In this document: piece by piece, positions 16,331 through 42,434 of the stretch
How positions within the stretch are numbered: position 1 is the first letter of the stretch
Layout: every line of letters starts with the position of its first letter
Origin: Hydrolagus colliei
Taxonomy: Eukaryota
Assembly: GCA_035084275.1 (NCBI GenBank)
Contig: CM068745.1
Coordinates: forward strand, 61,194,001 to 61,258,000
DNA length: 64,000 nucleotides
Direction: 5' to 3'
Program-made: the position numbers and the translations under genes
Notes under the pieces: generated by a model
Databases searched by the model: none
What the model saw: only the letters and a program-made list of their open reading frames with translations
Told to the model about the DNA's origin: nothing

Positions 16331-16400
16331 ATGAAGTGTTGCAACTCTTATAGATCATACCACCACGCTGAAATTGTTTGGATTATTTTCATCCTTTCAG
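16331..16400 (+). CDS. Candidate leader (signal peptide) exon of the single-V Ig receptor
   Basis: AAAATGA start; MKCCNSYRSYHHAEIVWIIFILS + 1 nt; donor TCAG|GTAAAG in phase 1, matching the V exon; in-frame upstream ATGs at 16250 and 16289. Confidence 0.6.
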
Positions 16401-17899
16401 GTAAAGCTCATAAAAAAATTCTTTTAAATTATTTTCACTCAAGGCAACTAGTTGAGAATGGTGCTCTGTTGTTGACAGATTAACATTTTAGCTAAACTCC
16501 AGAATAGTATTTCAAGGCCCCAGTCATTATGCTTGTTTTAGTAACATATTGTAAACTGATTTAAATTGAATTATTTTGTGATGCTGTATGGTAAGTGGAA
16601 CTTCACAGGAGTTGATTTCTTCAGTAGATTTGTTTGAAGTACTTTTAGATTTTCAAGGCCTGAAATTCAACATGGTCTTTACGTGTTAAAATCTAAAATA
16701 AACCAGAAATGTAATTTTTTTTAACAATATGGAAAAGTAAGCAGCAAATTCACATTGAATTTAGGAATTTTCTGCAATTCTACATGATATTAAATTTCAA
16801 GAACAAATATTTAAGTCTTGGAGGCTAAGTAAAACCAGCACACAAGTGTCTTTTAGCAAACTAAATAGCAATATAAAACAACAATAAATTGGGAAGTACT
16901 GTCTGTTGAGAAATATCTATAATGTTGTTGACTACGTGCATTGACTTCCTAATATTTTACTTCATTTCAACTAAGACATTTGAAATGAGTGTGGAATAAT
17001 AATCTTTAAAAATCACAAAAGTCTTTGCATTTAATACAACCCTTATTATATTGAAACCCTACAGTGACTGTATTTCTCAGAAAATGGGCTAACTAATTTA
17101 GACTCAGCAAAGTCCCATGAATAATTAGTGAATTTGATTGCTATCTCGAATGTAAAAGAAAACTTCTCTTTAAATAGTTTCACCTGAACAGGCTGATCCA
17201 CCTGATCTTAGTTTACTCACTCATCCATATACTTTCAAATCTACATATCTTGTGAAGCTCATTGAGATGTCGCAATAACATGATAAAGCTCTACATCAAA
17301 TGCAATGACTAGTATTATATATATAATCTATTACAATTATTTTCTTCAGTATGGCACCTTTGGTGATACAGTTAACAAGTATGAAATAGATAAAAGTGTC
17401 TTAACTATCTGAGATTACATCTATAGAACGTGTTGCATGTTTCCTCATTCTGTTCTGATCAGGAGGGATTTCAAACCTTCAAACCGTGACCAAGATAGGA
17501 AAGCAGTATTGTCTCTTGCTGAAACTGTGTTTTCTGTTCTCAAAGTGTTACATCTGTTGATGCAACAGGCCCACTCAGATAACTACTGTATCATAACACC
17601 TACCAGTCCACTAAAATAACAAATGTCAGCAGGATGATATGCTTTGAGACTGGGAAAAAGTATCATAAAATTAACAACAGAAATTGAAGTCCCTGCAGAA
17701 AGGGACTTCATTCTGAACGTGTCACAAATAACTGCCTATTTTTGTAATCTGTTATAGTAACAAATTTATTGCAAATATTGTCAGCTTTAAACCCTATTAT
17801 TCACACTACATCAATCCTCTGCTATCAGGTGTCAACTTGCCTCTGAGTCAGACAATTGTGGATTCAAATCTCATGTGAGGAACTTCAACTCATAGATTT

Positions 17900-18830
17900 A
17901 TACAGCACAGAAGAAGGCCATTCAGCCATCATGTCCGTGCCTGCTCTTTGAAACAGCTGTCCAAATCAATCCCACGCCCCACTCGCTCCCTATAGCACAG
18001 CAAATTTGTCCTCCCCAAATAATTATCTACTTCTCACTTAACAGTTGCTATCAAGTTGACTTCCACCACCCTTTCAGGCAATGCATTCCAGATCTGAACA
18101 ACTCACTATGTGAAAAAATTTCTTCTTGCTTCCCCTCTGTTTATTTTAACAACGATTATAAATCGGTGTCCTTGGGTTACTGACCCAAGTTTACTGGTTT
18201 TCCTTGTTTACCATAAGGAATCCCCTCATAATTTAGAAAACTTATACTGAGTTTCCTCTAAACCTTCCCACACTGTCCCTTGAATACCGTGGAATTCTAC
18301 TTTGCTTACAAGTCTCTTATGTGACCCTATGTCACACACTTTTTGAAAATCCATATAAACTACATCAACTACACTACCTTCATCCACCCTCTCTGTTACT
18401 TCATCAAAAAACTCTTATCATGTTTGTTAGTCATGATTTGCCTTGAACAAATCCATGATGGCTGTCCTTTATTCACCCACATTTTTCAATATTAACCCAA
18501 AGTGAAAAATGATTTTGTCCCAGATTATAGTCCCAAGAAGTTTCCCAGCTACTGACTGGCCTGTAATTCTCAGGTTTATCCTGCTGTCCCTTTCTTTACA
18601 CGGGAGTAGCATTTGCAACCCTCCAGTCCTCAGGCAGCAGCCCGATGTCCAAGGAAGATTGAAAGATTGTGGCCAGAATCTCTGTTTTTTTCAACCTTAC
18701 TTCCCTCAGTAAACTAGGATGCATCCTGTCCAGAATGGGGGCCTTATCTACCTCGAGCACTGTTAACATTTTTAGGACCTCCTCTCTGTTTATTCTTGAT
18801 CAATCCAAATTTGCTACCCTTTGCACCTGA
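17900..18830 (-). mobile_element. CR1 LINE 3' end and RT fragment, degenerate
   Basis: GGCCATTCAGCCATCATGTCCGTGCCTGCTCTTTGAAAC 3' block; rc of GGATGCATCC..GGGGCCTTATCTACC (DKAPxLDRMHP-like). Confidence 0.75.
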
Positions 18831-19014
18831 AGTCCCTCTATGTCCCTATTTATAATGCCAAGTATCAAATAGTTAAAGCTGACACTCATATTCTCCCAAA
18901 TGAGACATTAAAGCACTCTGAGATGCCGTCCGGCAAGGAGGGCGCTATATAAATCAAAGTTGTTGTTGTTGTTATTAAACTGAGGTCCTGTCTGCCTGTT
19001 CAGATCGATAATAA

Positions 19015-19386
19015 AAATAATTAGTATCCTTGCATTTGATATAGCGCTTTTCACATCTTCCAGACATCTCAAAGCACTTCACAGGATATTCTGTAAAGTG
19101 AATGGACTATATATTTGTGGGCAAAATGTGGCAGCTAATTGCGCACAGCAGTGTCCCACAAACAGTTGTGGATTGAACAACAACAAAATTACATTCATAG
19201 AGCATCTTTCACGTTGGGAGGATGTCCCAGGCACTGAAGTTACCAATTTTTTTAATTTTTTTTTTTGAGGGGTAATTATCAGGCGCGTGTAATCAGGAAC
19301 CTTGCCCAAGGTTTCGCCCTGACTGGATTTGAACCCAGGTCTCTCACTTGCAAAATGAGTGCCCTAACCACTGAGCTACAGGATTC
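19015..19386 (-). mobile_element. Deu-SINE containing a roughly 60-bp L2 tail (about 19176-19235)
   Basis: TCCTTGCATTTGATATAGCGC tail, head CTGAGCTACAGGATTC; internal AACAACAAAATTACATTCATAGAGC. Confidence 0.85.
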
Positions 19387-20077
19387 CACAGGACTCCTAT
19401 GAGTAGTTTCCAGAATAACACAGCTATGATCAACAAGTTCAAAAGAAAAACTTCAAAATAATAATCCTTGCCTTAGTGCCTTTCACATATGGATGATCTC
19501 AAATCACTTCACAGGATATACTGTAAAGTGCAGTGACTGTATTTGTAGGAAATGTGGCCCCCAATGTATCTGGGGGATCATTGGCCAGGACACCGGGAGA
19601 AACTCCCTTCTCTTTTGGATTGATGCCATTATTATGGATGATAAAGATCCTGAGGTACTATTCATAAAGAGAAGAGATTCTCTCTCTCATTATCCTGGTC
19701 AACAATTCCTCCAAAATAAACTTGGTAATTTGTTTCAAATTATACAATCTGTTTGCGTTTGTATTGCCGTGTTTGCCTACAAATACAAAGGCACTCCATC
19801 CACAGTAAATCCTGCAAAGCATGTTGAGGCATTTTTTTCTAAGTTGGAGTGCCCTTTACCAAAGCAAGGATTATGTATTATTATTAATACATACCAACAC
19901 TTATTTGTTAATGTAATTATTATTGTTGAAGAACAGCTAAATGAGTAAAATGAGTAAACAATCTGAACAGATCTATGATTGTTGCAATGAAGTTAATGTA
20001 CATGTGTTAATCTGCAAATTTATACTGCCAATTCATTGGTTAATTAAAACTTTAGTGACAGTGCGACATAAAACACA

Positions 20078-20380
20078 TTAATAATAATAATCCTTGCATT
20101 TGATGTAGTGCTTTTCACGTCTTCTAGATGTCACAAAGAGCTTCACGGAATATACTGTCGTGACTGTATTTATGTGGGTGAAGCGCGGCAGCCAAATGTG
20201 CACAGCAGTGTCCCACAAACATTGGGGATTGAAATAACCAATTTTTGTTAAAAAAATTTTGAGTGATCATTATCAGACCTGTGCAATAAGGAAACTTGTC
20301 GTAGGTTTCGCCCTGATCAGAAACACACCCAGGTCTCTTATTTGTAAGGCGAGTGCTCTAACCATTGAGCTACGGAACTC
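20078..20380 (-). mobile_element. Full-length Deu-SINE
   Basis: (AAT)n CCTTGCATTTG ... GAGTGCTCTAACCATTGAGCTACGGAACTC. Confidence 0.88.
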
Positions 20381-20929
20381 TACATTGATTGCTCTCTGGA
20401 TATGCTGAAAGTGGATACCACTTCCGATAGCTTTAAAACTTTCTCAGCAGAGAAGCAAGCTCAAAGATTAAACCACTGCCCTTTTGGTTAGAGAGATACT
20501 GCCTTTAATTGTTTATTTGTTTAAAGCAATAATACACTAACCAACAATCTAATTCTGTAATCCATGAGGCAGATATCAATGGTGCAACTGACTTGTCTGT
20601 GGTGATGTTTGAGAAAGGTGTCTGATTTAGCAATCATGTCCAGCACATTTGAAGAGCAATCAATGTGTTAAATATCTTTAAGGTCACTCACAATTACTAA
20701 ACTTCATCCCAAACACATTTTGTTGAATTAGATTTACATAGTACAGTAATAGGAAATAAAGTTTCCTTTGTGAGCTGTGTAAGCCCCATACAACCAACTG
20801 CCCTTCAATAGCTAATTAATAACTCATGTTAATGATGTCTTTGCTGGACTCCTAAATTTTGAACAACTCAAAGCTTTTTAGCTGAGGACTCATGCAGCTA
20901 TGGTGCCTTAATGCTGTAATTAGGTGTTA

Positions 20930-21150
20930 AAGTGAGATCCTGCCCGCCTGTTCAAATGGACATTGCAGATCCCATGGCACTATTCAAAAAGAGAAAGGAG
21001 TTTCTCCGGGTAATCTGGCTAACAATCTTCCATATAAAATTGGTCACTCATTTCATGGCTGTTTGTGGGACATTGCTGTGCGCCAATTGGCTGTTGTGTG
21101 CCTACAAATATAATTCTTATAGTAAATCCTGTGAAGATCTTTGAGGCATC
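20930..21150 (+). mobile_element. Older Deu-domain SINE with longer core
   Basis: GATCCCATGGCACTATTCAAAAAGAG..GGCTGTTTGTGGGACATTGCTGTGCGCCAATTGGCTG. Confidence 0.7.
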
Positions 21151-21371
21151 TTAACAATGTCATAATGTTTTTATCTTAAAATTCAAATGTGACATTTAAA
21201 CTCTTTCCTGCTCAACAAAATTACAAATGTTGTATCAACCTGTTTGAATTGTCCTGGAAATCCGTCTTAATACCATTTTCATAGTGTACTGCATGTTTTT
21301 GCGCTGCCCATTAACCTTCCGACGAACTTTCATCAGTCCCTTTAATGTCTGATAGCACTTTGTAACATTAT

Positions 21372-21730
21372 ATAATAATATAATTATTCTTGCCTTTGAT
21401 ATAGCACCTATTCATACTATTGAGACATCACAAAGGACTTCACATAGTATACTGTGAATGAATTGATGATATATTTTATGGGCAAAATGCGGCAGCCAAA
21501 TGTGCAAAACAGTGTCCCATGCATAGTCATGGATTGAGTGACCACATTTTTTTTAAGGGTTCATTACCCCCAGATTGATAAAGTGATTTATCAATCAACT
21601 AACAACCATGTTCTACTGGGTGAACAGAGGCATGTGGAGTAAGGAAACTTTTCTAAGGTCTTACCCTATCCAGAAATCGAACCTGGGTCCTCTCACTTGC
21701 GAGTGCTCTAACCAGTATGCTACAGGACTC
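21372..21730 (-). mobile_element. Full-length Deu-SINE
   Basis: Tail ATAATTATTCTTGCCTTTGATATAGCAC; head TACAGGACTC. Confidence 0.85.
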
Positions 21731-22254
21731 TGATATTAAATATCTAATCTAATAGCTACTTTCACATATACTTTGAAATCTCATCACTCCCTGCAGGCTA
21801 AACATAGAATAAGTCTTTCCATCACTTGGAGGCGCTATGCAAAGGCTTGAGTTTTCGCTTGGAAGGGAGAAATAAATTAACAGCAATCAACTAAATTAAA
21901 ATTGAATTTAAGACAGCTGTCCAACAATGGACAATTCCTTCATTTAAAAACTGTGAAGTTTAAAATAAGAACATACAAAGCAAGAACAGGATTCCACCAG
22001 TGTAGACAGGGAGGCAAAATTAATGTGACTAATTTATTTTTAATAGAGAAACCATCACTCATATTTGTAACTTATTGTCAAAAGCCATGAAATAGGCCTT
22101 TCTATGAGTCCTGCCAGTAGATAATTACACAGTACTAATCAAGAGAAGTTCAAGTAATGGAATGGGATGCACTTGACTGGCCACAATGGGGGTTGGAGCT
22201 CATAGTCAAACCATACGCTCCAGTGAAGGGAGTTTCCCAGGCTCTTGACATTCA

Positions 22255-22405
22255 CTTCACGGCCATTGGTTCATCTAATCTGTGCCGGCTCTTTGAAAAG
22301 AGCTATTCAAAGTCAATCCCACTCCCCAGCTCTCTCCCCATAACCCCGCAAACCTGTCCTCCCCAAATAACCATCTACCTCTCTTTCAAAAGTTGCTATC
22401 GAAAA
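22255..22405 (-). mobile_element. CR1 3' end fragment
   Basis: GCCGGCTCTTTGAAAAGAGCTATTCAAAGTCAATCCCACTCCCC is the rc of the CR1 3' block at 40255-40300. Confidence 0.75.
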
Positions 22406-22425
22406 TTTGTGAAGCATTGCTCTGT

Positions 22426-23357
22426 CATGTACGCAGATTACACCCAACTGTATCTCCCTGCCTCCACTGTTGACTCCAGGACCACTGCTGACTTGACAGA
22501 AAGTCTGTCAGACATTAAGTCCTGAACGAGAGCTAACTTTCTACAGTTAAAGGTCAACAAGACTAAGGCCCTCCTAATTAGCTCCTGTCAATGCCTTCAC
22601 ATTTCAGGTGCTAAAACCATGACCTTCCATGGATGCACACACCACCTCACAGAGCCAGTCTGGAAACTTGGTGTCTTGTTTGACCCTCAACTATCCTTTC
22701 TACCCCACATACGTGCCATGACTGGCTCTGCCGTCCCCCACCTCCGTAACATTGCATGGCTCCACCACTGTCTCATCCCTATATGCATTTATAACATCCA
22801 GGCTTGACTGTAAACTCATTACTTATAAACTTCTCCCTCCACAGGCTGTAGATCATCCAGAACTCTGCAGCCTGTATCCTCTCCCGAGCTAGGCTCTGTG
22901 ACAATATCACCCCCACCCTCACCCACTAGCTTCCCAGCATACAGAATTTAAGATTGTGGTCCTCACCTTCAAAGCCCTCCATGGCCTCACTTCGCCCTTA
23001 CCTCTGTGACCTCCTAACCCCCTACCAACCTGCTTACTCCCTCTGCTCAGCGGGCTCCGGCCTGCTTTACATCCTGCTTTGGGTCCATCCCACCATTGAC
23101 GGGCAGGTCTTCAGTCACTCTGCCCACCCTCTGAATTTCCATCCCGCAGTCACTCCTCCTTGCCCCCTCTCTTGCCTCCTTCAAGACCTCCCTTAATATC
23201 CTCCTCTTCGATCATGATTTCAATCAACCTCCTTACCCCACTGACCTCCACCCTCCCTATCCTTACCCACTGCTCAGGTCCGAAATACAGTTTGTCCACC
23301 ACATTGGGATGACCTCCCAGCGTGAAAGGTACTATACAAATGTAATTTTGTTGTGGT
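22426..23357 (+). mobile_element. L2 LINE 3' 0.9 kb
   Basis: MYADYTQLYL..SLSDIKS; tail CGTGAAAGGTACTATACAAATGTAATTTTGTTG. Confidence 0.88.
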
Positions 23358-23367
23358 GGTCAAGTTG

Positions 23368-24303
23368 TTGACACCCAACTGTATTTCTCCACTTCATTTT
23401 GCGACCCCCAGTCCCCTGATGTTCTGTCAGCCTTCCTGTCAGACATCAGGAGCTGGATAAGCGCAAATTTCTTGCAGCTGAATGTTGACAAGACGGAGGC
23501 CAAACACTTTGGTTCTCATCAACGTCTCCATTCACATGGCTCTCATCTCCTCCACCTTCCTGGTCTCCCCCTGAAACTCTCCGAACCTGTGCGCAACCTA
23601 GGCGTCAGGTTCGACCCCCAACTGTCCTTCCTTCCCCACATCCGGTCCCTCACCAGCACTGCCGTCTACCACCTCCGACGGATCGCCTGTCTCCAACAAT
23701 ACCTCACCCCAAAAGCCACTGAAACCCCGGTCCACGCCTTCGTCACTTCACAGCCGGATTATTCAAATGCCCTCCTTGCCGGTTTCCCCTCTACCACAAT
23801 CCATAAAATGCAACTCATCCCAAACTCTTCCACCCGCATACAAACTTCGCTCTCCCATTACACCAGTCCTTGCCAGACTTCACTGGCTCCCTATCCCAGA
23901 GAGGGTTGACTTCAAGATCCTCACCCTTGTTTTCAAATCCCTCCACTCCTCTGCACCCCCCTATCTCTCTAAACTCCGCTCTCCTCAAACCAGCTCCCAT
24001 TGCTTCCACTCCACTGGGTCTGGCCTCTTCCATGTCCCCCGAATCCTCCGCTCCACCCTTGGTGGCCGTGCCTTCAGCCACTATGCCCCAAAGCTCTGGA
24101 ACTCCCTTTCTCACTACCTTCGCCTCGCCCCCTCTTTCCTCAGTTTCAGGTCCCAGATAAAGACCTTTCTCTTCGACTGTGCCTTTGGTCACCTTTCTAC
24201 CCCTGCTCCTGGCTTGGTCCCAAGCACTCTGTGAAGTGCTCTGAGATGCCGTTTGGCGTGGAGGGCGCTATATAAATCAAAGTTGTTATTGTTGTTGTTG
24301 TTG
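23368..24303 (+). mobile_element. L2 LINE 3' 0.9 kb, second subfamily
   Basis: LQLNVDKTEA..NLGVRFDPQLSFLPHI..LARLHWLPIPERVDFKIL; tail GGCGTGGAGGGCGCTATATAAATCAAAGTTGTT. Confidence 0.92.
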
Positions 24304-24577
24304 GTTGCAAAACATCCGCAGATACTACTGTTGAAACCCTAGTGTTAGGGAAGATTAATTAATTGATAATTAATGGAGTATTGATGCTTTAAAGCACTGT
24401 TTAGAATGTTTGAACATTTAGAGAAAGCAAATGGTAGACGGTGTGAAAATTCTGGACTTAAAGTATTGAGCCTAAGCAAGCGACAGAGTTTACAGAATAC
24501 CATGGGATAACAATTAAATTAACCTTAGAAGTAAGTTAGTTTCAGAAACTATTTTTATTTGAAATGCAAATGTTTCG

Positions 24578-24899
24578 ATAATAATAATAATAATCCTTGC
24601 ATTTGATGTAGTGCTTTTCACATCTAATCGACGTTTCAAAGAGCTTCACAGAATATACTGTAACGTGAATTAACTGTATATTTGTGGGTGACACGTGGCA
24701 GCCAATTGTGCACAGCAGTGTCCCACAAACAGTCGTGGATTGAAATGACCAATTTTATTATTGTGGGTTTTTTTGCCGGATTATTGTTAGGTGTGTGGAG
24801 TACAGAAATTTGCCCAAAGTTTTACCCTGATCTGCCTGGATTTGAACAAATGTCTCACGCTTGTAAGGCGAATGTTCTAACCACTGAGCTACAGTACTC
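24578..24899 (-). mobile_element. Full-length Deu-SINE
   Basis: (AAT)n CCTTGCATTTG ... CTAACCACTGAGCTACAGTACTC. Confidence 0.88.
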
Positions 24900-26245
24900 C
24901 ATCATGGTTTTAATATATCTTAAAATAGATCAAAATATTCATTTGTTTCATTTTTTTAATATTTGATGGTCATGTATGTGTACACTTAAGCTAATTGAGT
25001 ATATATTTAAATACATATTCCACAATTGTGTGTATATAGTGTTTAGTATACAAATATTTTAAACCTTAACATTTTAAAAGTGATTCAATTAATGTACAGT
25101 CAAACTTGTTAAAGCAACCACCATTATCAGCAGCACCTGCTATCAACAATCACCGTAGAATTATCCCGACCAATTTTCCAAAAAGAAACCAGTGACCACG
25201 TATACACAAACCATTTTCCAAACCCAGTAGAAAGTGAATTTAAGTGTAGTTACCACTAATACATTACCAATTTTTGGTGGCTGGTGCTGAACAGCCTATG
25301 TGAAGCTCACAGCTTCTCACCTCACTGAGGACGTGTTGGTAAATGAACTTAGGAGTCTAGCAAGTGTCTACATGTGGGACACAAAGACATTTTTAACCCA
25401 TGGAAATATAATTTCGAGATCAGTCAATCATAGGACACTCTTACGCAAAGGCCACCCTGGGTGGTTCCTGAAAACAATTTTGACTCCATTTACTTTGTTT
25501 ATGTACATAACAGAGTTACATTTGTACAATGTATTTCATGTCAGGGGGATGTGAAGGTAGCGCTTAAATATTTTCAGATCTGCTCAGGAACTAAAAAGAA
25601 ATAGAAAAGGCATACAACAACAACAAAATTACATTTATAGAGCGCCTTTGACATCGGGGGACGTAGAATGGAATTGAATTAATTGAGTTAAATACAAAAG
25701 AGAAATCTCAAAGGGGTATAGGGATATGATTCTCACCATGAAAATCAAGGTAAATTCAGAATTTTTTAGGATAAATTGATTGGCATAGACTCTAGGAAGG
25801 AATCAATATTTTCATATGCTTCCACACTTTATCAGCTTTAATACAGAAATGAAAAAACGGAAATGCGTCACCTAAGAACTACAGCAATGAGATTTGCCAT
25901 GATCCAAATGAACAGGAATTATTAAATTGATGTATATTATTGTGAAACATACTGTCTGACCCAGAGGGATACAGTATAAATATTGGGAGGGAGTTGTTGA
26001 AAATATATATACAGTATACAGTAAAACCTTGCTTATACGGCAACAAACCACCTGACACGCTCAAACAACCAGTATCTCCCAATAAAAGTAAAATTTGAGT
26101 ACTGTATACGCGTTTTCTCCGCGCGTATGCTCACTTTGTGCATGTGTGCGCATGCGCACTTATTAACATTACCGAACACAATTTTACCGAGTGTGCTGCT
26201 TTCCAGGAATGTAACTCCCGCGTTCGGCAAGGGTTGACTGTACTA

Positions 26246-27201
26246 CAGGTAGACCCCGCTTACCGAACGCCCGGTTAACAAAACTTCACCCTAACGAAGG
26301 TTTCTATTTGTACCACTTCTCCGCTTAACAAAGGATATTTTCGCTATAACGAATGTTTATACACACTTTAAATCTCGCAGGCTTCTCGTGCGCAGCTTTT
26401 CATGCACAGCTTCTCTCTGGTTGCCCCAGCAACGCACACTCAATCTTTGCGTGCCTCATTTAGGCAGTGCAGTGCAGCCCCTCCCATATGGGAGGAGCTT
26501 AAGCGGCAGGATGCTTCATGGCTTCAATAATAGTAAGTCAAGATATGGGGGCGAGGTGGGGGGATAGAGAGATGGGAGGGATAGAGAGAGGAGGGGGGAT
26601 AGAGAGAGGAGGGGGGATAGAGAGATAGGGGGGGATAGAGAGATAGGGGGGGATAGAGGGGAGGGGGAATAGAGAGGAGGGAGGATAGAGAGATAGAGAG
26701 GAGGGGGTGATAGAGAGGGAGGGGAGCAGGGAATAGAGAGGGAGGGGAGGGGAGCAGGGAATAGAGAGGGAGGGGAGGGGGGCATAGAGAGATAGAGATG
26801 GAGGGGGGAGATAGAGAGATGGGTAGAGAGAAAGAGAGGAGGGGGAGGAAGAAAGAAGCGCATCACGTATCCTGAAATGCCTGGGTCCAGTTTGCGATAT
26901 TTCAGTGTGGTGACTGTGCAGACCTGGCCTGGAGCAGGTAGGATTAGCGTTTTTATTCGTACAATTTTTGTCACATTTCGGATTCCGGAACTCTGGATTT
27001 TTGGCTGCTCAACCTGTACACCGAAAATGTTAGCGCTAGGAACCGCTAGGAACTAAACTGATGTTAGCGGGGAGGCTCGGATCGGGGGTGGTGTTTTGAT
27101 TGCGGCCAAATACAGTAATACAGTTAACCTCTCGCTTAACGAAATGTTTGCTTAGCAAAGGGTTTTATACCCTAACCCCTTCATTAAGCGGGGTCTACCT
27201 G
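26246..27201. mobile_element. pogo/Tigger-type MITE (inner layer)
   Basis: Perfect 17-bp TIR CAGGTAGACCCCGCTTA, TA on both sides. Confidence 0.88.
26547..26858 (+). repeat. Purine-rich minisatellite (GGGGGATAGAGAGA-like units)
   Basis: About 310 bp with almost no C on the + strand and repeated G4-G6 runs. Confidence 0.92.
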
Positions 27202-28169
27202 TATTTATATATCCTTTATTGGTAAGTATCCATACAATATTCTGTTATTATTTAGTCTATTATTAATATGGTATGTTTTAAAATAAGTTAATTTTTTGTG
27301 TAGGATTTTCGGCAACTTGCCGCTCGAATATGGCTTATTTGATTAACCGGCACCGGTCAGGTCCCGAGGGTGCCAGATAAAAAAGCTTTTACTGTATTTA
27401 TATAGGGATCAAATTTTCAGGAATCATAAGACTTCTAAATTATTAACTCCTGCACATATCTAGATGTATATTGTATACGCCAGCCAGATGACAATCTCCT
27501 AACAGTCACTGCGAGTCTCCTTTTTGTCTCCTTTTTGTCGCAAATGACAGAAATTAGATCATCTCCCAAGCAGGTTGGTTCAGTCATTATGAAACACATC
27601 CCAGTAGGTGCAGGATTCGTTCTTTTTTAATCCTTTTATGAATCTCTCAATTTGCTGTTTGAAAATTTGTACCTTTTCCATAACAGCAATTTATGAAATG
27701 TCCTAATCAAGAAATGATTCTAATTTGCAATATTATATTGTAAAACTATTGATTCCTCTTTTCATATCGCCAATTCCCCCTAGGTCATGAAAATCTATTG
27801 CTAGTAAAGTTGTATTTTTAATGTATTTAGACCATAGGCATCTGTGAAACGCTTGCTGAACTGCACCATTTATATGATAGATTCATAGTTTTACAGTAAC
27901 TAATGATGCTTACATTATGAAGCTTACCAATGTCAACAGTTTGATGATGCTTACACGCTTTGCTTGGTCAATTGGTTAATTTCCCAATAATACTTTCTTT
28001 CTAATCCACACAGGCATATCTTGTAACCAAATATCGAAAACATTACCGTAGGTCCCCTGCATGCTAACTGCAAGTAACTCAGGGCTCACACTAAGTCTAA
28101 TGTGAAGTGGGGTACTGGAAATGCGGTAATTTTACGACAACCAGCATAAAGCTTAGAAAAAATGTGCGC

Positions 28170-28250
28170 TAACCACGTGCGCAACCACGTGCTCGTGATC
28201 AGCTGTGTGGGGACGTGACGTGGGGAACACAGCTCAGCAGCCAACACGAT
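28170..28250. promoter_or_regulatory. CpG-retaining E-box cluster in intron 1 (candidate enhancer)
   Basis: CACGTG 28174-28179 and 28186-28191 in a repeated AACCACGTGC, CAGCTG 28200-28205, TGACGT, 8-bp inverted repeat AGCTGTGT/ACACAGCT. Confidence 0.3.
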
Positions 28251-29051
28251 AATAACGAGTGTTATTCAAGTGTGATAATAGCTTGTAGCAGTTGAAGACA
28301 CTCATTATTATCCTGTTGGCTGCACCAGTCTGGTACAACTGCTACAAGCAAGAATAATAACACAATCTAAGAAGAAAAAAAGCAGTTCAAGAAACATTGG
28401 ACAGATTTTTTTTAAACGGCCATCCACCCCTTCATCTGAATGACTCCGTCCCCACCACTCACCGTTGCCCATTACCGCATCAACCATCTCCAATACGTTT
28501 TCTTGTTGTATTAATATTGAATTGATATATTGGTACTTGTTAAACATTTATTTCAATTCTCAATAGTAGTAATGTTGTTTTTGCTCTTTATTCAATATTT
28601 GTGTAAGAATATTTAGACAAGAAATGTACCACAGGAACGTAACCCCTACCTGTATCATTATGACTATGGTAATCTGAGTTTCATTATCAGTCGTTTCAAT
28701 TAAAATTGCATCTTTCAAGAACACATCCAATTGAGGAGTTGGTGTACCAGTCTTTCCAGAGTGTCTTCCCGTTCAATCATATTATTATTGGGAAGGGGAT
28801 TCCATGAGATAAATGTCTAAATGTTGAAAAGTTTCATAACTATGTTGAGGTTGGGGGTCAGTTCCTCTCGTACGCGCAGCTTCTCTTTTGTAATAGATTA
28901 CAAATGGCTGTTTCTTAACAGATACAATGTGATACTTACTAAGCATCACAATTTTCACACCATGCTTCTTATTTGAGGTATAGTGTAAATTTGTTTATCA
29001 CAGCTTTCTTCACATCACAGTTATTTTCTGGTTAAACAGTTTCCTTCACAG

Positions 29052-29375
29052 ATGCTGATGATAGAGAAACTGTTAAACCTTTAGTCGGAGAAACAATAAT
29101 TCTTCACTGTAGCAACACCTCAGAGATGAACATAACTCAAGTGACCTGGACTAAAGAAACCAACTTTACAAGTGAATCTATTATTTCATATCAATCGTTA
29201 TTGAACAAGTTATACATAGGGAATACGAGCCAGAGGATTGTGCTCTTACAAAGTTCTCAGGGACTCTGCAATCTACAGATACAGAATGTGCAGCTTTCTG
29301 ATTCAGGAACGTACAGCTGCACAGTGACAACACGACAGGTCCATCTCACGACCCAGTATCTTGTTGAGGTACAAG
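29052..29375 (+). CDS. Ig V-set domain exon of a CD200R/TIGIT-like receptor
   Basis: Acceptor TTCCTTCACAG|AT (in-frame alternative at 29040), donor CAAG|GTAATT, phase 1-1, 324 nt; GETIILHC..ITQVTW..LQIQNVQLSDSGTYSC (B-Cys, C-Trp, DxGxYxC). Confidence 0.93.
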
Positions 29376-30600
29376 GTAATTGCTTTTTGGTTTTTTACAT
29401 CTTAATCTGTTTTACTAAAAACAGAAAGACGCACTTTATTAATCAGTTTCCATTGTTTATTGTGCAATCTACAAAGGGTAAGAGTTTTCATGAGATTATT
29501 CTCTGATCAGTGTTACAGTTACAGACCTTGGCAATTCCTATTCCTTCCTTATTTTTGTTGTGTTTTGTTCCAATCAGCATTGCCATACACGTATCTGCAT
29601 TAAAACCATCTGCCAATCTTTTGTTTTTTGTGTAATTGATCCCGATTTTCTATGATGCTATGAACCTGACATTTACAATACTATTGTTTTTGAAATTGGC
29701 CTATTTACAGTGCATGGCATTTTTACAAGTTTACAAGTTGAAACAGAAATGGTAGTTGATTCCTAACACCTTCTGTCCTAATGCAACAAATTCTCCCGTT
29801 TATACAGTATTTTTCCCTCGACCTATGCCATTAGTTTCACAGGTACCAGCAGAAAACATCTCAAATAAGATCAAAATCTTCCTTGCAATTTTTTTTAACT
29901 ATGGGATAACATTCCAAATATTCTCCCAACATAAATGTTACAGAATGCGCAAATAATGCCTTGCATTGTAGATATATAGCACCAAATAACAGTTTATATT
30001 AATACCATAGAACATATGCTTCCAAAGACTAGTAAATGTACCAAAACATGATGAATAAACTTCTCCAATGCTAAAGAGTCTTTGTTAAGAACAATCCCTC
30101 CAACAATAAGTTCAGAATTCCTGTCTGTTGACACTTCCACTTTACATTTAAAAATAATTCCTATAGACTGATAATCAGAAATCCTACCAATTAACCAGCA
30201 GAATCCTACTGGGAGAGAGAAGGGGAATAAAGCAAGGTCTCCTTGGAACTGGAATAAAGTAACTTTTGTTTATTAGGATATGTAATCCATAATTTCCAGG
30301 CTCAGATATCACTGCTTTCTTTAATTTCGGGCCAATAATTCCAATGCTCTGCTCTTCAAGTATAGCTCTCGTGTGCTTACAGAGTTCGTAAACCTCACCT
30401 GTTTCTTTTGGTGTTTTACCAAAGATCTTCACATGCATCCTGGGTGACCTAATTTCTTTCCAGGCATTCACTAATTTCTAGTAACATGGTCAATTATAAT
30501 AGCACTCGTGTTGATTATTACCATTACTACTAATTATTGTACCATAAAACTCATTTTTTACCTGGATATCTGCTGTAAACTGATTGTTTCTGTCTTCCAG

Positions 30601-30691
30601 ATCCATGGACATATCTATACGTGGCATACATTGTTTCACCCATAGTGATTATACTAATCATTGTAATCATAGTTATCATTGTTTGGAAAAT
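30601..30691 (+). CDS. Transmembrane exon
   Basis: TTTCTGTCTTCCAG|AT ... AAAAT|GTGAGT, phase 1-2; DPWTYLYVAYIVSPIVIILIIVIIVIIVWK. Confidence 0.9.
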
Positions 30692-31604
30692 GTGAGTATA
30701 TTGCTAATCACTGGTTGACGTTATAATGGTAAAATATATAAGCAGCACGTTACAAAGGGGTGCTGTAGTGTTGTGTACACCTATAGTGTTGCCAGGTGTC
30801 AGCACTTTCAAGGTTGCCAAGATCATCGCTGATTGTACTGAACCCTGTGTGTCCTGTATGGCTGACTTCAGGAGGTCCAAACAGGAGGCATCATGCACAG
30901 CATCGCAGCCAGGCAGCCATCGGAAACGGACATGTACCCAATCTCAGTATACTGTAGATCCATCGTGTTGCAGAGTTATATCCAAATTAGTGGTGCACTG
31001 GTGCACTACAACAGATGTCAAGACTGTGGTTGTACCTTTCAAATACAGAAACCAAACAGAGACATGTTAAAAGATTTCAAGATGCATTTATGTCTTCCAT
31101 GGATAGAAGTACAAAAAATTTGCATAACTTAGCAATGTCAAATTTATCATTTAACCCCTTTATATAATTGAAGTTTTTAGGTTATCACTAACTCCATCCA
31201 TTTGGAAGGGAAAAAAATAACCGCACAAACTCAAATTTTAAAAAGGCTTACTTTGATTTCATAATATGAGAGGCCTCATTCACAGCCAAAACTAGAAGAC
31301 AAAGGAGAAAACAAAAGGGGATGTGAATAAAAAGAACATAGAATTGAGTCAAACAAGGGAACCATTCATAAGCCTGGAAGGAAATAAAGAAATCGCATCA
31401 AAGGGATAAATCTGGGAAATTTTAGAAACCCAAAGGCAAGAACAACCTTGATCTCACGCTGGCTCATCCAGAGATCCATTCTTCAGATCGTGTCAGGGAA
31501 AATGCAAGTTAAACACTCTCTTCCACGGTGCTCCATAAATGACCCTTAGAAATTGTCTCGAATGATTCTGAGGGTAAAGATTGCCCTCTTTACTGGGCCA
31601 CTTT

Positions 31605-31860
31605 ATAGGAAACATAAGAGTGTAGGAACACGAGTAGGCCATTCAGTCCTGCGAGCCACTTCCACCATTTAATTAGATCATAGCTAATCTGTACCTCAAC
31701 AAATGCTTTCAATTCCAATTTCCCGCTTTCTCCTATATCCCTAAATACCCTGAGCTACCAAAAATCTATCAACCTCATTCTTGAAGGTGTAGATGAATCC
31801 ACAGCCTTTTGAGTAAACAAATTCCAGATTTCTACCACCCTTTTATAAAGCATTTGGATC
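31605..31860 (-). mobile_element. CR1 3' end fragment
   Basis: AACATAAGAGTGTAGGAACACGAGTAGGCCATTCAG.. resembles the tail of the CR1 at 60408. Confidence 0.7.
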
Positions 31861-32933
31861 CACATTATCCTCATCAGTGTTCCCACCTAATGCCACTTGC
31901 TTGGCATGCATGTATGTCTGGTGTAGAGGAGATGAATGTGACAATCCATACCTGGGTTCATAGGGATCTTATGGAAGTTGCAAAATGTAACTGATAGGCT
32001 TGTGTCCATGATGAGTTTGATCTTGCCCAGAATCATGACCTGATAATATTTGTTCTGAGATAGTTAAATAATTTTTTAAACAGTTTACCAATTTTCTCCA
32101 TCTTCTATAAAATAGATCATGGGTATTTGGGTCCAAGTGATGAAGTTTCATTGAGTTAACAAGTGCAGAGTAAGATTTTCAGATGGTTTTCCTCCCAGTC
32201 AGTTACTGATAAGAGCTCTAGTTACTAATAGAAACTCTGGTTACTATTAATTGATAAACTATGTCTCCCACTTCCTATAAAATTGATCCAAATATACTTC
32301 TCCTCCTCCTGCTGTGACTCTAGGTCTGCTGATGTTCTGTCAGCTTGTTTGTCAGATACCAAGGCCTGGGTGATGGAAACTTATTGAGTTTGGGGGTTTG
32401 ATTCCCAGCAAGTTTCCTTACTCCTCATAATACACAATACACCTGATCATAATCACTCACAAGTAAATAAATAAACAATAATAAATAATAAATTAGTCAC
32501 TTCAATCCATGACTGTTTGTAGGACACTGCTGTGCACAATTGGCTGCTGCGTTTCACCCACAAATATACAGTCAATTCACTTTACAGAATATTCTGTGAA
32601 GCATTTTGAGATGCCTAAAATATGTGAAAAGTGCTGTATCAAATGCAAGGAATAATATTTTATGATCACTATTTCAATGTTGACACGATAGAAGTCATGC
32701 TAGGCTCCTGTCAATGTCATCTCTTTTGTGGTTCTTACCTTCTCAACTATCATGGAAAAAATCAATTTCAAGACCTCTCCGAGATCTTGCTCAATCTTCA
32801 CTCCACCAACCGTCGCTACCCCTCAGCTGGCTCAAAAACTTTTCTCGAAATTATTTGCCTATTTTTTGGAATCATCACTTTTTTTCTGCCAGCCAGTGTC
32901 TGACCCGTGAAAACACATCGCCATGCTTTAGAG

Positions 32934-33258
32934 CAGTGGTTCCCAACCTCGGATCCCGACCCAAATCAGGGTTGCAGGGGTCCTCATTTGGGTCGCGGAG
33001 GGTCATCAGAAATTTTTTGTTGTTGCTTTTTTTTTAACAGTGAAAATGCTTCTTTAATGTTTAAAAAAAAGGGCCCAAGACGACACCGCTGACCAATCTG
33101 TATAAAAGACTGTACTTACAAATTGTCCTGAGTCCACAAAAGAGACAGAGATAACGTTTTTGCTGAGCTTCGCTTCAGTCACTATGTTACTCCCTAGGGG
33201 TGGGAGAACCTGTTGGCGGCTAATTTGGGTTGCAGCAAAAAAAGGTTGAGAACCACTG
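32934..33258. mobile_element. hAT (Charlie-type) MITE, copy 1
   Basis: TIR CAGTGGTTCCCAACCT / AGGTTGAGAACCACTG; homologous to 63644-63941; TSD eroded. Confidence 0.85.
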
Positions 33259-33924
33259 TTTTATCCAAACCATTCCATGCATCCCACCTACATGTGGAAA
33301 TCCCATAGATAGATTGTTGGAATGGAATGCACACTCTCCTTGGAGGGATGCATCCTGCTTTCCTAATTCTGAAAGGTATTAGGAAAGTATTATTAGAATG
33401 AACAATGATTTTAAATATTCATTTAAATGTTCATTCTTCATCTATTATTCTAAATCTTTTACTCCTTTTAAACCTCATGGTGATCAGGTAGTGCACAATC
33501 CCCCAAATAACTTTAATACAGTTTATTTGCATTGCTTTGCATTTGCTTGTGCACACATACTCTTGTGCACACCAGTTCCAATGTGAAAATAACATGATTC
33601 CAAAAATAGCAAGTCTTAATTTGTTTGATTTTACGGCATCCACCTGATCATCTGAAATGATTTTTAGGCTTGTTTGACTGATTTGTTACGAGCATATACT
33701 GTGGAGTCAGCAAATGATATGTGTTTTCTCCTTTTTGTTTCAACTAGTTGTCACGGTAAACGTTGGTCAAAAGACATTGTGAAATTGACATGTGATAATA
33801 TCTGTATTGAAAAAATAACCATTGTAATGTAATTACTGAAATTTTGTCAAGTGATAATCTGCAATTTATTAGTAGAGAATGAGTCGCATAACATAACGGT
33901 TTTCCTTTATTTTCAAAAATGTAG

Positions 33925-33961
33925 GAAGCTGAACAAACCTACTAACAGAGAATGTAGACAG
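33925..33961 (+). CDS. Cytoplasmic exon 1
   Basis: TTTCAAAAATGTAG|G ... ACAG|GTAATT, 37 nt, phase 2-0; (M)KLNKPTNRECRQ. Confidence 0.8.
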
Positions 33962-34953
33962 GTAATTATTAGGTTTTATACACAATCAGTAAGCAATGCT
34001 CCTACAGTATAAGCTATACTTTTTATTCAACCCAAGTTACTATTTGTTAGCTATTGTCGCTATTCTTGTGTTTGTTCATTGTACTATTTCAGTTTTAGAT
34101 TCCTTTGCTTTATCATCATGCATCATAATCATTGCGCTAATTGTACCTCAGAGGAGCCAGCTTGTGTTCTTTAGTCATTGTTCAGATAGATTTGTTTAGA
34201 ATAGATGATTAATTGGTAAACTGTCTGAGTAAAGTTGCAGTGGAACCTATAATTCTTCGGTTGTACATGGATCCATTATCATCACCTTTATTGAGATGAA
34301 GCTTCTTAAAATATATATCTTGAGTTTGTAGTAGTGAACTGTACCAATCTATCAGCTCATAAATTGATCCCGGTCCTCCTAAATATCTGCACCAATGCTG
34401 GGGTAGCATTACTCTTTGGTTAAGTTGCAAACCTCTGCTGTACTGTTTCTTATCAATGACATATAAGGCCACAAGTTGCAGAAGGCGGATAAAATCACCT
34501 ATGACTCATGACCCATCGAACAGTCATAATTGTTCTACTGTTCTCCACAAATTGAATTTGTGACTAACTGCAGCTTCAAAGAGAGGGAATACAAAGCAAA
34601 TGATCATTATAGGATTAGGGCTGGATTTTGAAAGATAAATTGCCCTTGTGCTGCTACATGTTCTTGCAACTAGTTACAAAAAGTATCTGGCAGAAGCTTC
34701 ATTTCTCTATTGCAATCGTTGCCCTGTTGCAGATTTTGGAAAAGAATGGATCCAATGCATGGAAGCCAGAGAGATGTTTTGTTGTACGGTCATTCTTTAG
34801 AAGTAGTTGAAATATGTGCCTTTTCATGATGCATCCTAATGATCACATTAAACATGTTATAAACCTCCATGAATTTCACTTCTGTCAGCAAACAGTGCTG
34901 TCTAAAATTACTGTTTCATTTCAGAAACTAACCATTACTTTTGTTTCCTATAG

Positions 34954-35049
34954 GAAGCAAATGCATCTGCTCTGCAACAACAGACCAGGGTTTACGTAGA
35001 AAGAATTAACTCTGTCTACGATGCATTATCCAATTATCACTCTCAATGA
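34954..35049 (+). CDS. Last coding exon with tyrosine motifs
   Basis: TTTTGTTTCCTATAG|GAA, phase 0; EANASALQQQTRVYVERINSVYDALSNYHSQ-TGA. Confidence 0.85.
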   Translation, partial: EANASALQQQTRVYVERINSVYDALSNYHSQ

Positions 35050-35217: not shown

Positions 35218-35223
35218 AATAAA
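35218..35223 (+). other. Candidate polyadenylation signal
   Basis: AATAAA about 170 nt after the stop codon, just before an antisense L2 tail. Confidence 0.5.
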
Positions 35224-42258: not shown

Positions 42259-42434
42259 CTCTAACCAACAGGGACAACACGAGGTGGTTGGGACAGACAG
42301 TAAACTCCGGACCAGAGCTGGGGATTAGGGAGGGCAGGGAGGGTGGAGGAGTGAGAGACACAGAGAGAGAAAAGAGGTTGATTGAAAGCACGAGAAAGAA
42401 GGGCCATAAGCACGTGGTGGGAGGGGGTAGAGAA

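What the first reader, a model, noticed from the sequence alone, without database searches (positions are those of the whole stretch)
16331..35049. Single-V-domain immune receptor with TIGIT-like architecture and a CD200R-like tail
Seen: five GT-AG exons with matching phases (1,1,2,0) splice to a 618-nt ORF (205 aa): leader, one V-set domain, a stalk of only a few residues, a TM helix with no charged residue, and a tail of about 45 aa with tyrosines. No C2 exon is visible between V and TM. Established: CD200R1 has V+C2 domains and an NPLY tail; TIGIT has a single V with ITQ/VTQ and an ITIM; they lie in the same mammalian cluster as CD96, CD200 and BTLA. Inference: this is a hybrid or basal member of that family in a probable cartilaginous fish, i.e. 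a candidate inhibitory checkpoint receptor. I cannot tell whether it is already annotated.
Basis: partly seen in the sequence, partly recalled or inferred. Interest (0 to 1): 0.75.

Follow-up and report, generated by a model that had tools for sequence, protein, structure and literature searches.

The report
Shark single-V receptor with CD200R-like tail
The window holds an intact five-exon gene for a small cell-surface immune-type receptor with one antibody-like domain; similar unnamed genes occur in other sharks, and its closest named relative is the mammalian inhibitory receptor CD200R rather than TIGIT.

Summary
Five GT-AG exons (16331-16400, 29052-29375, 30601-30691, 33925-33961, 34954-35049; phases 1,1,2,0) splice to 618 nt / 205 aa: leader, one V-set domain, short stalk, uncharged TM helix, 45-aa tail. 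The basking-shark RefSeq gene LOC144682500 has the same five exons, a 70-nt first coding exon and the same phases. No C2 exon exists.

The organism is a cartilaginous fish; the nearest V domain is from Callorhinchus (61%). The gene belongs to a conserved, unnamed family ("uncharacterized protein") in sharks, sturgeon, bichir and teleosts.

It is not a TIGIT or PVR-family member. Only one of the three PVR signature motifs is present, and the ITIM-like SVYDAL is not conserved.

The CD200R link is better supported:
- The tail core YVERINSVY matches mammalian CD200R1 YTEK(N/S)NPLY in register.
- A mammalian CD200R1 profile scores family V domains highest among 161 related Ig proteins.
- A V-domain tree joins the family with CD200R1 (support 82-93%).

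Generic tail statistics are weak, alternative tree placements are not firmly rejected, and synteny and RNA evidence could not be obtained.

Most likely function: an inhibitory receptor that signals through a phosphotyrosine NxxY motif and Dok-type adaptors. This is inferred, not shown.

The parts
16331..16400 (+). Coding exon 1: start codon and signal peptide (MKCCNSYRSYHHAEIVWIIFILS plus 1 base), phase 1 donor
   Evidence: Donor CAG|gtaaag scores 7.9. The exon aligns to the leaders of the shark homologues, MKS.H.CKS.... The Cetorhinus first coding exon is also 70 nt.
29052..29375 (+). Coding exon 2: V-set Ig domain, phase 1-1, with four N-glycosylation sequons. An alternative acceptor at 29040 adds VSFT.
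   Evidence: Pfam V-set E=2e-14. AlphaFold gives a beta-sandwich with pLDDT 80-92. The domain is 61% identical to Callorhinchus A0A4W3IWP7.
29132..29140 (+). ITQ, the (V/I)(S/T)Q motif in strand C; T52 and Q53 are invariant in the family
   Evidence: Alignment A1; sequence read.
30601..30691 (+). Coding exon 3: short stalk plus a transmembrane helix without charged residues; ends in phase 2 inside the Met codon of ..WKM
   Evidence: Acceptor ttctgtcttccag| and donor |gtgagt score 4.5 and 8.9. The Cetorhinus exon 3 also ends ..YKM in phase 2. A helix is predicted for residues 133-164.
33925..33961 (+). Coding exon 4: 37-nt juxtamembrane cytoplasmic exon (KLNKPTNRECRQ), phase 2 to 0
   Evidence: Best-scoring of all phase-compatible candidate exons. 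It aligns with Cetorhinus NQVDCSVQ.. and Heterodontus NQEQCSV...
34954..35049 (+). Coding exon 5: the rest of the tail (EANASALQQQTRVYVERINSVYDALSNYHSQ) and stop TGA at 35047-35049
   Evidence: Strong polypyrimidine acceptor. The tail aligns with those of the other sharks.
34993..35019 (+). Conserved tail motif YVERINSVY (family consensus [YF]x[ED]RxNS[VI]Y). It is in register with CD200R1 YTEK(N/S)NPLY. The next residues complete SVYDAL, an ITIM-like match.
35218..35223 (+). First AATAAA after the stop codon (169 nt downstream): candidate polyadenylation signal
   Evidence: by position only, not verified.

Best explanation
The locus is an intact five-exon gene for a 205-aa (or 209-aa) type I membrane glycoprotein. 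It has a signal peptide, one V-set Ig domain, a very short stalk, an uncharged transmembrane helix and a 45-residue cytoplasmic tail.

The gene is the holocephalan-like member of a conserved but unnamed family found in sharks, sturgeon, bichir and teleosts. The closest named relative of the family is CD200R1. The V domain groups with CD200R1 V domains. The conserved tail core, [YF]-x-[ED]-R-x-N-S-[VI]-Y, corresponds position by position to the CD200R1 signalling core Y-T-E-K-x-N-P-L-Y.

Inferred mechanism:
1. Ligand binding by the V domain clusters the receptor.
2. Src-family kinases phosphorylate the NxxY tyrosine (Y196) and the upstream tyrosine (Y188).
3. The phospho-NxxY recruits PTB-domain adaptors of the Dok type, and through them RasGAP. 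This damps Ras/ERK signalling, as in CD200R1.
4. In this species the same tyrosine also sits in an ITIM-like SVYDAL, which could additionally bind SHP phosphatases.

The gene structure, domain content, family membership and motif conservation are shown. Kinship with CD200R is moderately supported. The signalling mechanism, the ligand and the expressing cells are inferred.
For: Gene model:
- Canonical splice sites and an open frame.
- The same five-exon plan, a 70-nt first exon and phases 1,1,2,0 in the Cetorhinus RefSeq gene.

Family:
- Homologues are 48-61% identical in the V domain, with the same leader, TM region and tail, in six chondrichthyans.

V-domain link to CD200R:
- hhalign of the family profile against a CD200R1 profile gives 95.8% probability, E=8e-9, almost gapless over 105 columns.
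- A mammalian CD200R1 HMM was run over the 161 proteins nearest to this V domain. It gives its best whole-V scores to family members: sturgeon 45-48 bits, Callorhinchus 33.5, the window 27.2. Most unrelated proteins score 11 bits or less. Several other proteins scored in the family's range: P0137, P0078, P0045 and HHLA2 through V plus C2 spans, and one uncharacterized teleost protein (P0101, 23.8 bits) over a V-only span.
- For the sturgeon V domain, the best single-domain PDB match is CD200R1 (30.9 bits).
- Foldseek finds CD200RLa and CD200R at ranks 9-14.
- The ML tree joins the family with CD200R1 at 89/97. The clade recurs in four re-analyses at 82-93 / 80-89.

Tail:
- The register YVERINSVY vs YTEKNNPLY is the one hhalign chooses.
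- The regex Y.[ED][KR].N..Y hits every CD200R1 tail tested. Outside the family it hits none of about 150 Ig proteins (244,499 residues).
- The catfish member also shares the juxtamembrane RKCK-KTET.

Mechanism:
- In CD200R1 the NPxY tyrosine and an upstream tyrosine recruit Dok1/Dok2 and RasGAP, and the receptor has no ITIM (PMC7915401).
- The TM helix has no charged residue, which argues against pairing with DAP12 or FcR-gamma.
Against: - The tail similarity is short and weak by generic statistics. hhalign gives E=0.15. The Smith-Waterman shuffle test gives p about 0.01 for the window only and is not significant for the other sharks. With the CD200R tail HMM the window ranks first of 161, but only at E=0.1.
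- The proline of NPxY is serine in all fish members.
- The tyrosine equivalent to mouse Y286, reported as critical, is absent.
- By raw similarity the window V domain is nearer to nectin-1 D1 (36 bits) and CD226 D1 (30 bits) than to CD200R.
- AU tests do not firmly reject family+TIGIT (p=0.09) or family+CD226 (p=0.26).
- The CD200R1 branch is long, so long-branch attraction is possible. The comparator set lacks CD200, CD96, PVR, PVRIG and non-mammalian CD200R.
- CD200R has V+C2; this gene has V only.
- Salmon already carries a gene annotated 'CD200 receptor 1A-like'. A separate canonical fish CD200R may therefore exist, which would make this family a paralogue.
- No RNA, expression, ligand or synteny data were obtained.
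Confidence: 0.55

Rival explanations
1. It is a TIGIT/CD226-type member of the PVR/nectin receptor family. Under this reading a single V domain binds nectin or PVR-like ligands by the lock-and-key interface and signals through an ITIM.
For: - The (V/I)(S/T)Q motif is present and invariant.
- The best single-domain PDB sequence matches of the window V domain are nectin-1 D1 and CD226 D1.
- Foldseek's top hits are nectin-1 D1.
- The layout, single V plus TM plus short tail, is that of TIGIT.
- SVYDAL fits the ITIM consensus.
- In sturgeon, bichir and a butterflyfish, family-type genes lie next to nectin-like V-C2-Ig genes.
- The AU test does not reject family+TIGIT or family+CD226.
Against: - AX6G and T(F/Y)P, the two motifs that build the PVR-family interface, are absent from all family members.
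- hhalign to TIGIT gives only 73-76% probability, score 39.
- TIGIT is not among the top 60 PDB sequence hits or the top 50 Foldseek hits.
- The tree prefers CD200R1. Family+nectins+CD226 is borderline rejected at p=0.048.
- The ITIM +3 position is S in Cetorhinus and Chiloscyllium.
- There is no YxN ITT-like motif in the shark tails.
Confidence: 0.12
2. It is a fish-lineage IgSF receptor or adhesion molecule with no specific kinship to any named mammalian receptor. The tail match to CD200R is convergent or due to chance, and the tree grouping is a long-branch artefact.
For: - All database names are 'uncharacterized' or generic.
- Identities to every named V domain are only 18-24%.
- Generic statistics for the tail are weak.
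- Tree support stays below the 95% UFBoot threshold and the alternatives are not rejected.
- The family has expanded into multi-V proteins in teleosts.
Against: - Two independent parts of the protein, the V domain and the tail motif in exact register, point to the same named family.
- The motif is conserved from sharks to catfish and is absent from about 150 other Ig proteins.
Confidence: 0.25
3. The five exons are not one expressed gene. They would be a pseudogene, or an exon chain assembled by eye, especially the leader 12.6 kb upstream and the 37-nt exon.
For: - No transcript evidence is available, and neither predicted protein is on record.
- The V domain is only 61% identical to the nearest relative, although the start of the following intron is more conserved.
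- The introns are full of LINE and SINE copies.
Against: - All exons are open, all sites are canonical, and each exon has a homologous counterpart of the same phase in a RefSeq gene.
- The leader is 43% identical to the Heterodontus leader.
- Exon 4 is the best-scoring candidate and conserves the N..C pattern.
Confidence: 0.08

Closest known systems
CD200R1 (OX-2 receptor), the mammalian myeloid inhibitory receptor
   Same: - A V-set domain of the same length and loop pattern, aligned almost without gaps (hhalign 95.8%).
- The V domain groups with CD200R1 in ML trees.
- An uncharged TM helix.
- A tail of similar length, followed by two small cytoplasmic exons.
- A shared tail core, Y-x-E-(K/R)-x-N-x-hydrophobic-Y-D, with 8-residue spacing between the tyrosines.
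- No conserved classical ITIM.
   Different: - No C2 domain or C2 exon.
- NSVY instead of NPLY.
- The tyrosine equivalent to mouse Y286 is missing.
- V-domain identity is only about 20%.
- Ligand unknown and synteny untested.
Uncharacterized chondrichthyan proteins: Cetorhinus LOC144682500 (XP_078401018/19), Rhincodon LOC109913307, Chiloscyllium chiPu_0001832, Heptranchias XP_067841581, Heterodontus XP_067890534, Callorhinchus A0A4W3IWP7/A0A4W3J617
   Same: - The same architecture and the same exon plan and phases.
- The same leader and the same ITQ/LTQ motif.
- The same tail motif.
   Different: - Identity is only 32-61% (whole alignment).
- The window protein has a shorter stalk.
- It has an extra Cys in the V domain (GLCNLQ).
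- Its C-terminal end is longer (..DALSNYHSQ).
- None of these proteins has a described function.
TIGIT
   Same: - The single V plus TM plus short tail layout.
- The (V/I)(S/T)Q motif.
- An ITIM-like sequence in this species.
   Different: - AX6G and T(F/Y)P are lacking, and there is no ITT-like YxN motif.
- Profile similarity is weaker.
- The family does not group with TIGIT in the tree.
Nectin-1 D1 / CD226 D1 V domains
   Same: - The highest raw sequence and fold similarity of the window V domain.
- The ITQVTW strand.
   Different: - Nectin-1 and CD226 are multi-domain proteins with the T(F/Y)P 'key', which is absent here.
- Their tails are unrelated.
- The tree does not join them with the family.

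Membership tests
Ig superfamily, V-set domain | Match to the V-set profile, with the Cys-Trp-Cys core and the D.G.Y.C motif | tested here: met
   PF07686 E=2.1e-14, above the gathering score. C43, W56 and C113 are invariant in the family. The fold is a beta-sandwich.
CD200R family | Ectodomain of V plus C2 domains | tested here: not met
   There is no Ig-like ORF in the 1.2-kb V-TM intron or elsewhere in the gene. C2 queries find nothing in the window or in the Cetorhinus locus. RefSeq models of the relatives have no C2.
CD200R family | Cytoplasmic NPxY motif preceded by conserved tyrosine(s), with no ITIM | tested here: inconclusive
   The Asn, the Tyr, the upstream Tyr, the Glu and the Lys/Arg are in register (YVERINSVY vs YTEKNNPLY). 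Pro is replaced by Ser and the Y286 equivalent is missing. The motif-level control is clean, but generic statistics are weak.
CD200R family | V domain groups with CD200R V domains in a phylogeny | tested here: met
   The clade has support 89/97 and recurs at 82-93 / 80-89 in four variants. The CD200R1 HMM ranks family members first. Caveats: limited comparators, and the alternatives are not firmly rejected.
CD200R family | Genomic neighbourhood of CD200, BTLA and CD200R1, and binding to CD200 | not testable with these tools
   The window flanks hold only repeats. The fetched loci give at most 10 kb of flank. No binding data exist.
PVR/nectin receptor family (TIGIT, CD226, CD96) | (V/I)(S/T)Q motif | tested here: met
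   ITQ at residues 51-53; T52 and Q53 are invariant.
PVR/nectin receptor family (TIGIT, CD226, CD96) | AX6G motif (the 'lock') | tested here: not met
   The C'-C'' region reads SESIISYQSLLNKLY. No A-x6-G occurs in any family member. Compare TIGIT AICNADLG.
PVR/nectin receptor family (TIGIT, CD226, CD96) | T(F/Y)P motif in the FG loop (the 'key') | tested here: not met
   The FG loop reads CTVTTRQVHL. The motif is absent in all members. Compare TIGIT HTYPDG.
TIGIT | ITT-like YxN motif followed by an ITIM in the tail | tested here: not met
   There is no YxN in the shark tails. SVYDAL fits the ITIM consensus here, but the +3 residue is Ser in Cetorhinus and Chiloscyllium.
Activating immunoreceptors that pair with DAP12/FcR-gamma | Charged (K/R) residue in the transmembrane helix, and a short tail | tested here: not met
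   The TM segment YLYVAYIVSPIVIILIIVIIVIIVW has no charged residue, and the tail is 45 aa with three tyrosines.

The most novel reading that the evidence does not exclude
This family is the fish counterpart (orthologue or sister) of CD200R. If so, the Dok-type NxxY inhibitory tail with its upstream tyrosine already existed in the common ancestor of cartilaginous and bony vertebrates. It would have sat on a receptor with a single V domain, and the C2 domain of tetrapod CD200R would be either a later addition or a loss in fishes. This would give a tractable ancient myeloid-checkpoint receptor in sharks.
Probability: 0.35. Interest if true: 0.6.

Novelty: new variant of a known kind. Interest (0 to 1): 0.42.

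Why it matters
CD200R is an unusual inhibitory receptor. It has no ITIM and signals through an NPxY/Dok2/RasGAP route, and it is a current checkpoint target. Its deep evolutionary origin is not described in the literature I could search. If the kinship holds, this conserved shark-to-teleost gene family dates that signalling module to before the cartilaginous/bony fish split. It also offers a minimal natural version of the receptor for ligand and signalling studies, with a CD200R-like V domain, the same tail core and no C2 domain. If the kinship does not hold, the gene is one more lineage-specific Ig receptor already annotated as 'uncharacterized' in several sharks.

Tried and rejected
1. My first enumeration of exons 3 and 4 required a long proline-free hydrophobic run. 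It produced wrong models with poor splice sites. These were replaced after a hydropathy scan found the real TM exon.
2. A word-indexed homology search with the V region found nothing. The exhaustive HMMER search was needed.
3. For synteny, 150 non-repeat ORFs from the flanks gave no credible Pfam hit; the only one was Aa_trans at E=0.003 among 150 ORFs. tblastx against the related loci showed only LINE and SINE matches outside the V exon. Look-ups of homologues in basking shark, bamboo shark, beluga sturgeon and grouper showed no neighbour within 10 kb. The catfish locus had one partial gene without Pfam hits at the edge of the flank, and only the sterlet, bichir and butterflyfish loci showed Ig neighbours.
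4. Tail homology by generic methods (hhalign, Smith-Waterman shuffles, a tail HMM) was weak. I therefore claim a motif-level match only.
5. Exact-protein look-ups of both predicted isoforms, tried as a proxy for transcript or annotation evidence, found nothing.
6. Literature searches for TIGIT, CD226 or CD200R in cartilaginous fish found nothing relevant.
7. A resemblance between the bichir and sturgeon tails (DIYINSLTI, DYYVNSLTL) and the CD226 C-terminus was recalled from memory. It could not be checked and is not used as evidence.
8. JAML and CD276 head the PDB list only because scores from two or more domains are summed; per-domain scores are lower than for nectin-1.

Full report
**1. The observation**

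It is bounded by an acceptor (cacag|AT at 29051/29052) and a consensus donor (CAAG|gtaat at 29375/29376), both in phase 1, and it matches Pfam V-set at E=2e-14.

The start codon at 16331 opens a 70-nt leader exon with a good donor. The last exon, 34954-35049, follows a strong polypyrimidine tract and ends in TGA.

A hydropathy scan then found 30601-30691, which has an excellent acceptor and a GTGAGT donor. The only strong phase-compatible exon between it and the last exon is 33925-33961. This exon ranks first of all candidates and is exactly the missing 37 nt.

**2. Is the model real?**

An exhaustive HMMER search of 1.84 billion representative proteins found single-V relatives in cartilaginous fishes:
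- Callorhinchus milii, 61% identity over the V domain
- Heptranchias perlo, 50%
- Heterodontus francisci, 49%
- Cetorhinus maximus, 48%
- Rhincodon typus and Chiloscyllium punctatum

All are named 'uncharacterized protein' or 'Ig-like domain-containing protein'.

The full-length shark proteins (205-217 aa) share several features with the window protein:
- the leader (MKS.H.CKS...)
- the V domain
- a W-containing stalk
- an uncharged TM segment
- a short exon with N..C
- a tail ending in [FY]Y[ED]R[IF]NS[IV]Y

The basking-shark gene spans 65 kb. Its five coding exons are 70/342/106/52/84 nt with phases 1,1,2,0. That is the window's plan down to the length of the first exon and the split Met codon after the TM exon.

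The two basking-shark isoforms differ by VYFT at the start of the V exon. The window has the same pair of acceptors 12 nt apart (29040 gives VSFT).

No C2 exon exists. The V-TM intron is 1.2 kb without an Ig-like ORF, and C2 queries find nothing.

I could get no RNA evidence, and neither predicted protein is on record.

**3. What family is it?**

*Sequence and fold.* The single-sequence search of the PDB is headed by JAML and CD276, but only because several domains are summed. Per domain the order is:

| PDB domain | Bits |
|---|---|
| Nectin-1 D1 | 36 |
| CD226 D1 | 30 |
| JAML | 20-23 |

. The family profile also finds CD200R1 (E=8e-10). Foldseek on an AlphaFold model (V domain pLDDT 80-92) ranks nectin-1 D1 first, then JAML, then mouse CD200RLa and CD200R, then CD226. 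TIGIT is not in the top 50.

*Profile-profile comparison.*

| Comparison | Result |
|---|---|
| Family vs mammalian CD200R1 profile | 95.8% probability, E=8e-9, nearly gapless |
| Family vs TIGIT | 73-76% probability |
| B-to-F strand segments only: nectin-1 and CD226 D1 | score about 60 |
| B-to-F strand segments only: CD200R1 | score 32-43 |
| B-to-F strand segments only: TIGIT | score 37 |

The TIGIT ectodomain I recalled from memory was verified against PDB 8vtd.

*PVR signature motifs.* Of the three, only (V/I)(S/T)Q is present. AX6G and T(F/Y)P, which form the lock-and-key interface, are absent in every member.

*Reverse search.* I built a mammalian CD200R1 HMM from sequences returned and ran it over the 161 proteins nearest to the window's V domain. 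Its best whole-V scores go to family members:
- sturgeon, 45-48 bits
- Callorhinchus, 33.5
- Chiloscyllium, 31
- Cetorhinus, 29.8
- the window, 27.2

Most unrelated proteins score 11 bits or less. Several other proteins scored in the family's range: P0137, P0078, P0045 and HHLA2 through V plus C2 spans, and one uncharacterized teleost protein (P0101, 23.8 bits) over a V-only span. For the sturgeon V domain, CD200R1 is the best single-domain PDB hit.

*Tree.* An ML tree of 28 V domains joins the family with CD200R1 at 89/97. CD200R1 sits in a polytomy with the family's subclades. The clade recurs at 82-93 / 80-89 when CD200R paralogues are added, when truncated sequences are removed, when the fast-evolving teleost and bichir members are removed, and when the alignment method is changed.

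AU tests are not decisive:
- family+TIGIT, p=0.09
- family+nectins+CD226, p=0.048
- family+CD226, p=0.26

**4. The tail**

The human and mouse CD200R1 tails returned by the database read ...EEDEMQPYASYTEK(N/S)NPLYDT.... The window reads ...QQQTRVYVERINSVYDAL.... The other tails are:
- other sharks: FYDRINSIY, YYERINSVY, FYERFNSIY
- a catfish member: YFERFNSVY

.

The positions conserved in one family are matched in the other:
- Tyr or Phe at position 0 or +1
- Glu/Asp at +2
- Lys/Arg at +3
- Asn at +5
- a hydrophobic residue at +7
- Tyr at +8

hhalign chooses the same register. The regex Y.[ED][KR].N..Y hits all 86 CD200R1 tails that carry the motif. Among the 158 Ig proteins of the HMMER hit set (244,499 residues) it hits family members only. 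The catfish juxtamembrane RKCKKTET also resembles CD200R RKCKLKKTE(T/A).

Generic statistics are weak:
- hhalign gives E=0.15.
- The shuffle test gives p about 0.01 for the window and is not significant for the other sharks.
- With the tail HMM the window ranks first of 161, but at E=0.1.

I therefore treat the tail as a motif-level match that agrees with the V-domain result. It is not proof of homology on its own.

**5. Mechanism (inferred)**

In CD200R1 the NPxY tyrosine and an upstream tyrosine are phosphorylated. They recruit Dok1/Dok2 through PTB domains, and these recruit RasGAP and inhibit Ras/MAPK. The receptor has no ITIM (review PMC7915401).

The shark receptor keeps the Asn-x-x-Tyr with a hydrophobic residue at -1 and one upstream tyrosine. 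Its TM helix has no charged residue, so it is unlikely to borrow an activating adaptor. From my own knowledge, not tested here, Dok PTB domains also accept NxLpY without proline, as in RET.

The window's SVYDAL additionally fits the ITIM consensus, but the +3 residue is Ser in two of the four other sharks. An ITIM is therefore not the conserved feature.

The ligand is unknown. The lack of AX6G and T(F/Y)P argues against canonical nectin/PVR binding.

**6. Surroundings**

The window is rich in LINE reverse-transcriptase fragments and a short repeat present in up to 17 copies. ORFs from the non-repeat flanks gave no credible family hit, so the window carries no synteny information.

In sturgeon and bichir, a gene of about 410 aa with V-set, C2-set_2 and a third Ig domain lies next to or inside the family gene, on the opposite strand.

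In the butterflyfish Chelmon, a RefSeq 'nectin-1-like' protein (P0137) has a nectin-like V-C2 followed by a family-type V domain, TM segment and CRKRRQTRTE tail. It sits in a tandem array with similar genes.

This links the family to nectin-like genes in ray-finned fishes. That fits the mammalian NECTIN3-CD96-CD200-BTLA-CD200R1-TIGIT region only loosely, and I recall that gene order from memory.

**7. Verdict**

The gene is real as a model and conserved.

The best reading is a single-V, CD200R-related inhibitory-type receptor. The family is annotated but unnamed in other sharks. I rate it a new variant of a known kind and of moderate interest.

Noticed in passing
window 29376-29460: The start of the intron after the V exon is more conserved with Callorhinchus than the V exon itself. 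The Ensembl-derived protein A0A4W3J617 reads through this donor. Its first 18 read-through residues match the window's translation at 14 of 18 positions (GNCFLVFYILICFTKNRK vs GKCFLFSYILICFTKNKK), against 61% in the V domain. This suggests fast or diversifying evolution of the V domain, and that the window comes from a holocephalan.
   Followed up: partly
window 29040 vs 29052: Two acceptors lie 12 nt apart at the start of the V exon. The upstream one adds VSFT. The same alternative exists in Cetorhinus isoforms X1 and X2 (VYFT) and in Heptranchias (VSFT).
   Followed up: partly
window 56374-56523: A run of 150 N (assembly gap or masked stretch).
   Followed up: no
window 17.9-18.8 kb (-), 22.1-24.3 kb (+), 38.4-40.3 kb (+), 46.0-47.4 kb (-), 54.6-56.1 kb (+), 60.5-61.9 kb (-): Fragments of LINE reverse-transcriptase ORFs (motifs such as VPQGSVLGP and YADD-like) with stops. 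They are shared with the shark, sturgeon and catfish loci. They fill the introns and flanks of the gene.
   Followed up: partly
window 19003-19390, 20075-20386, 24575-24901, 32408-32680, 41946-42267, 42906-43229, 51821-51951, 60201-60427 and others: A short interspersed repeat of about 300 bp with up to 17 copies in the window. It is probably a SINE and was not classified.
   Followed up: no
window 26516-26974 (-): A low-complexity Pro/Ser/Leu-rich ORF of 152 aa (..SPPISLSPPISLSPLLSLS..) arising from a simple repeat. It is not a gene.
   Followed up: no
L007 (Chelmon rostratus CM030625.1) 1-25854; protein P0137 XP_041807414: A teleost 'nectin-1-like' protein combines a nectin-like V-C2 with a third domain, TM segment and juxtamembrane sequence of the family studied here. 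It lies in a tandem array with a 224-aa single-Ig gene and a 388-aa paralogue. It is either a real V-C2-V receptor or two fused gene models.
   Followed up: partly
L003 (Acipenser ruthenus) 25814-26876 (-); Polypterus senegalus locus of P0042: In sturgeon and bichir, a gene of about 410 aa (V-set, C2-set_2, third Ig domain) lies on the opposite strand next to or inside the family gene. Its identity was not established. The last exon in sturgeon ends ..EDVDSV.
   Followed up: partly
protein P0013 (Heptranchias perlo XP_067841581, isoform X2): After the V domain this isoform continues with an unrelated 50-residue C-terminus without a TM segment. It may be a soluble splice form of the family gene. 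The automatic name 'opioid-binding protein/cell adhesion molecule-like' is misleading.
   Followed up: no
window 16250 and 16289: Two in-frame ATGs lie upstream of the chosen start codon in the same open stretch. Homologues start at the position of 16331 (MKS...), so that start was kept. The transcription start site is unknown.
   Followed up: no
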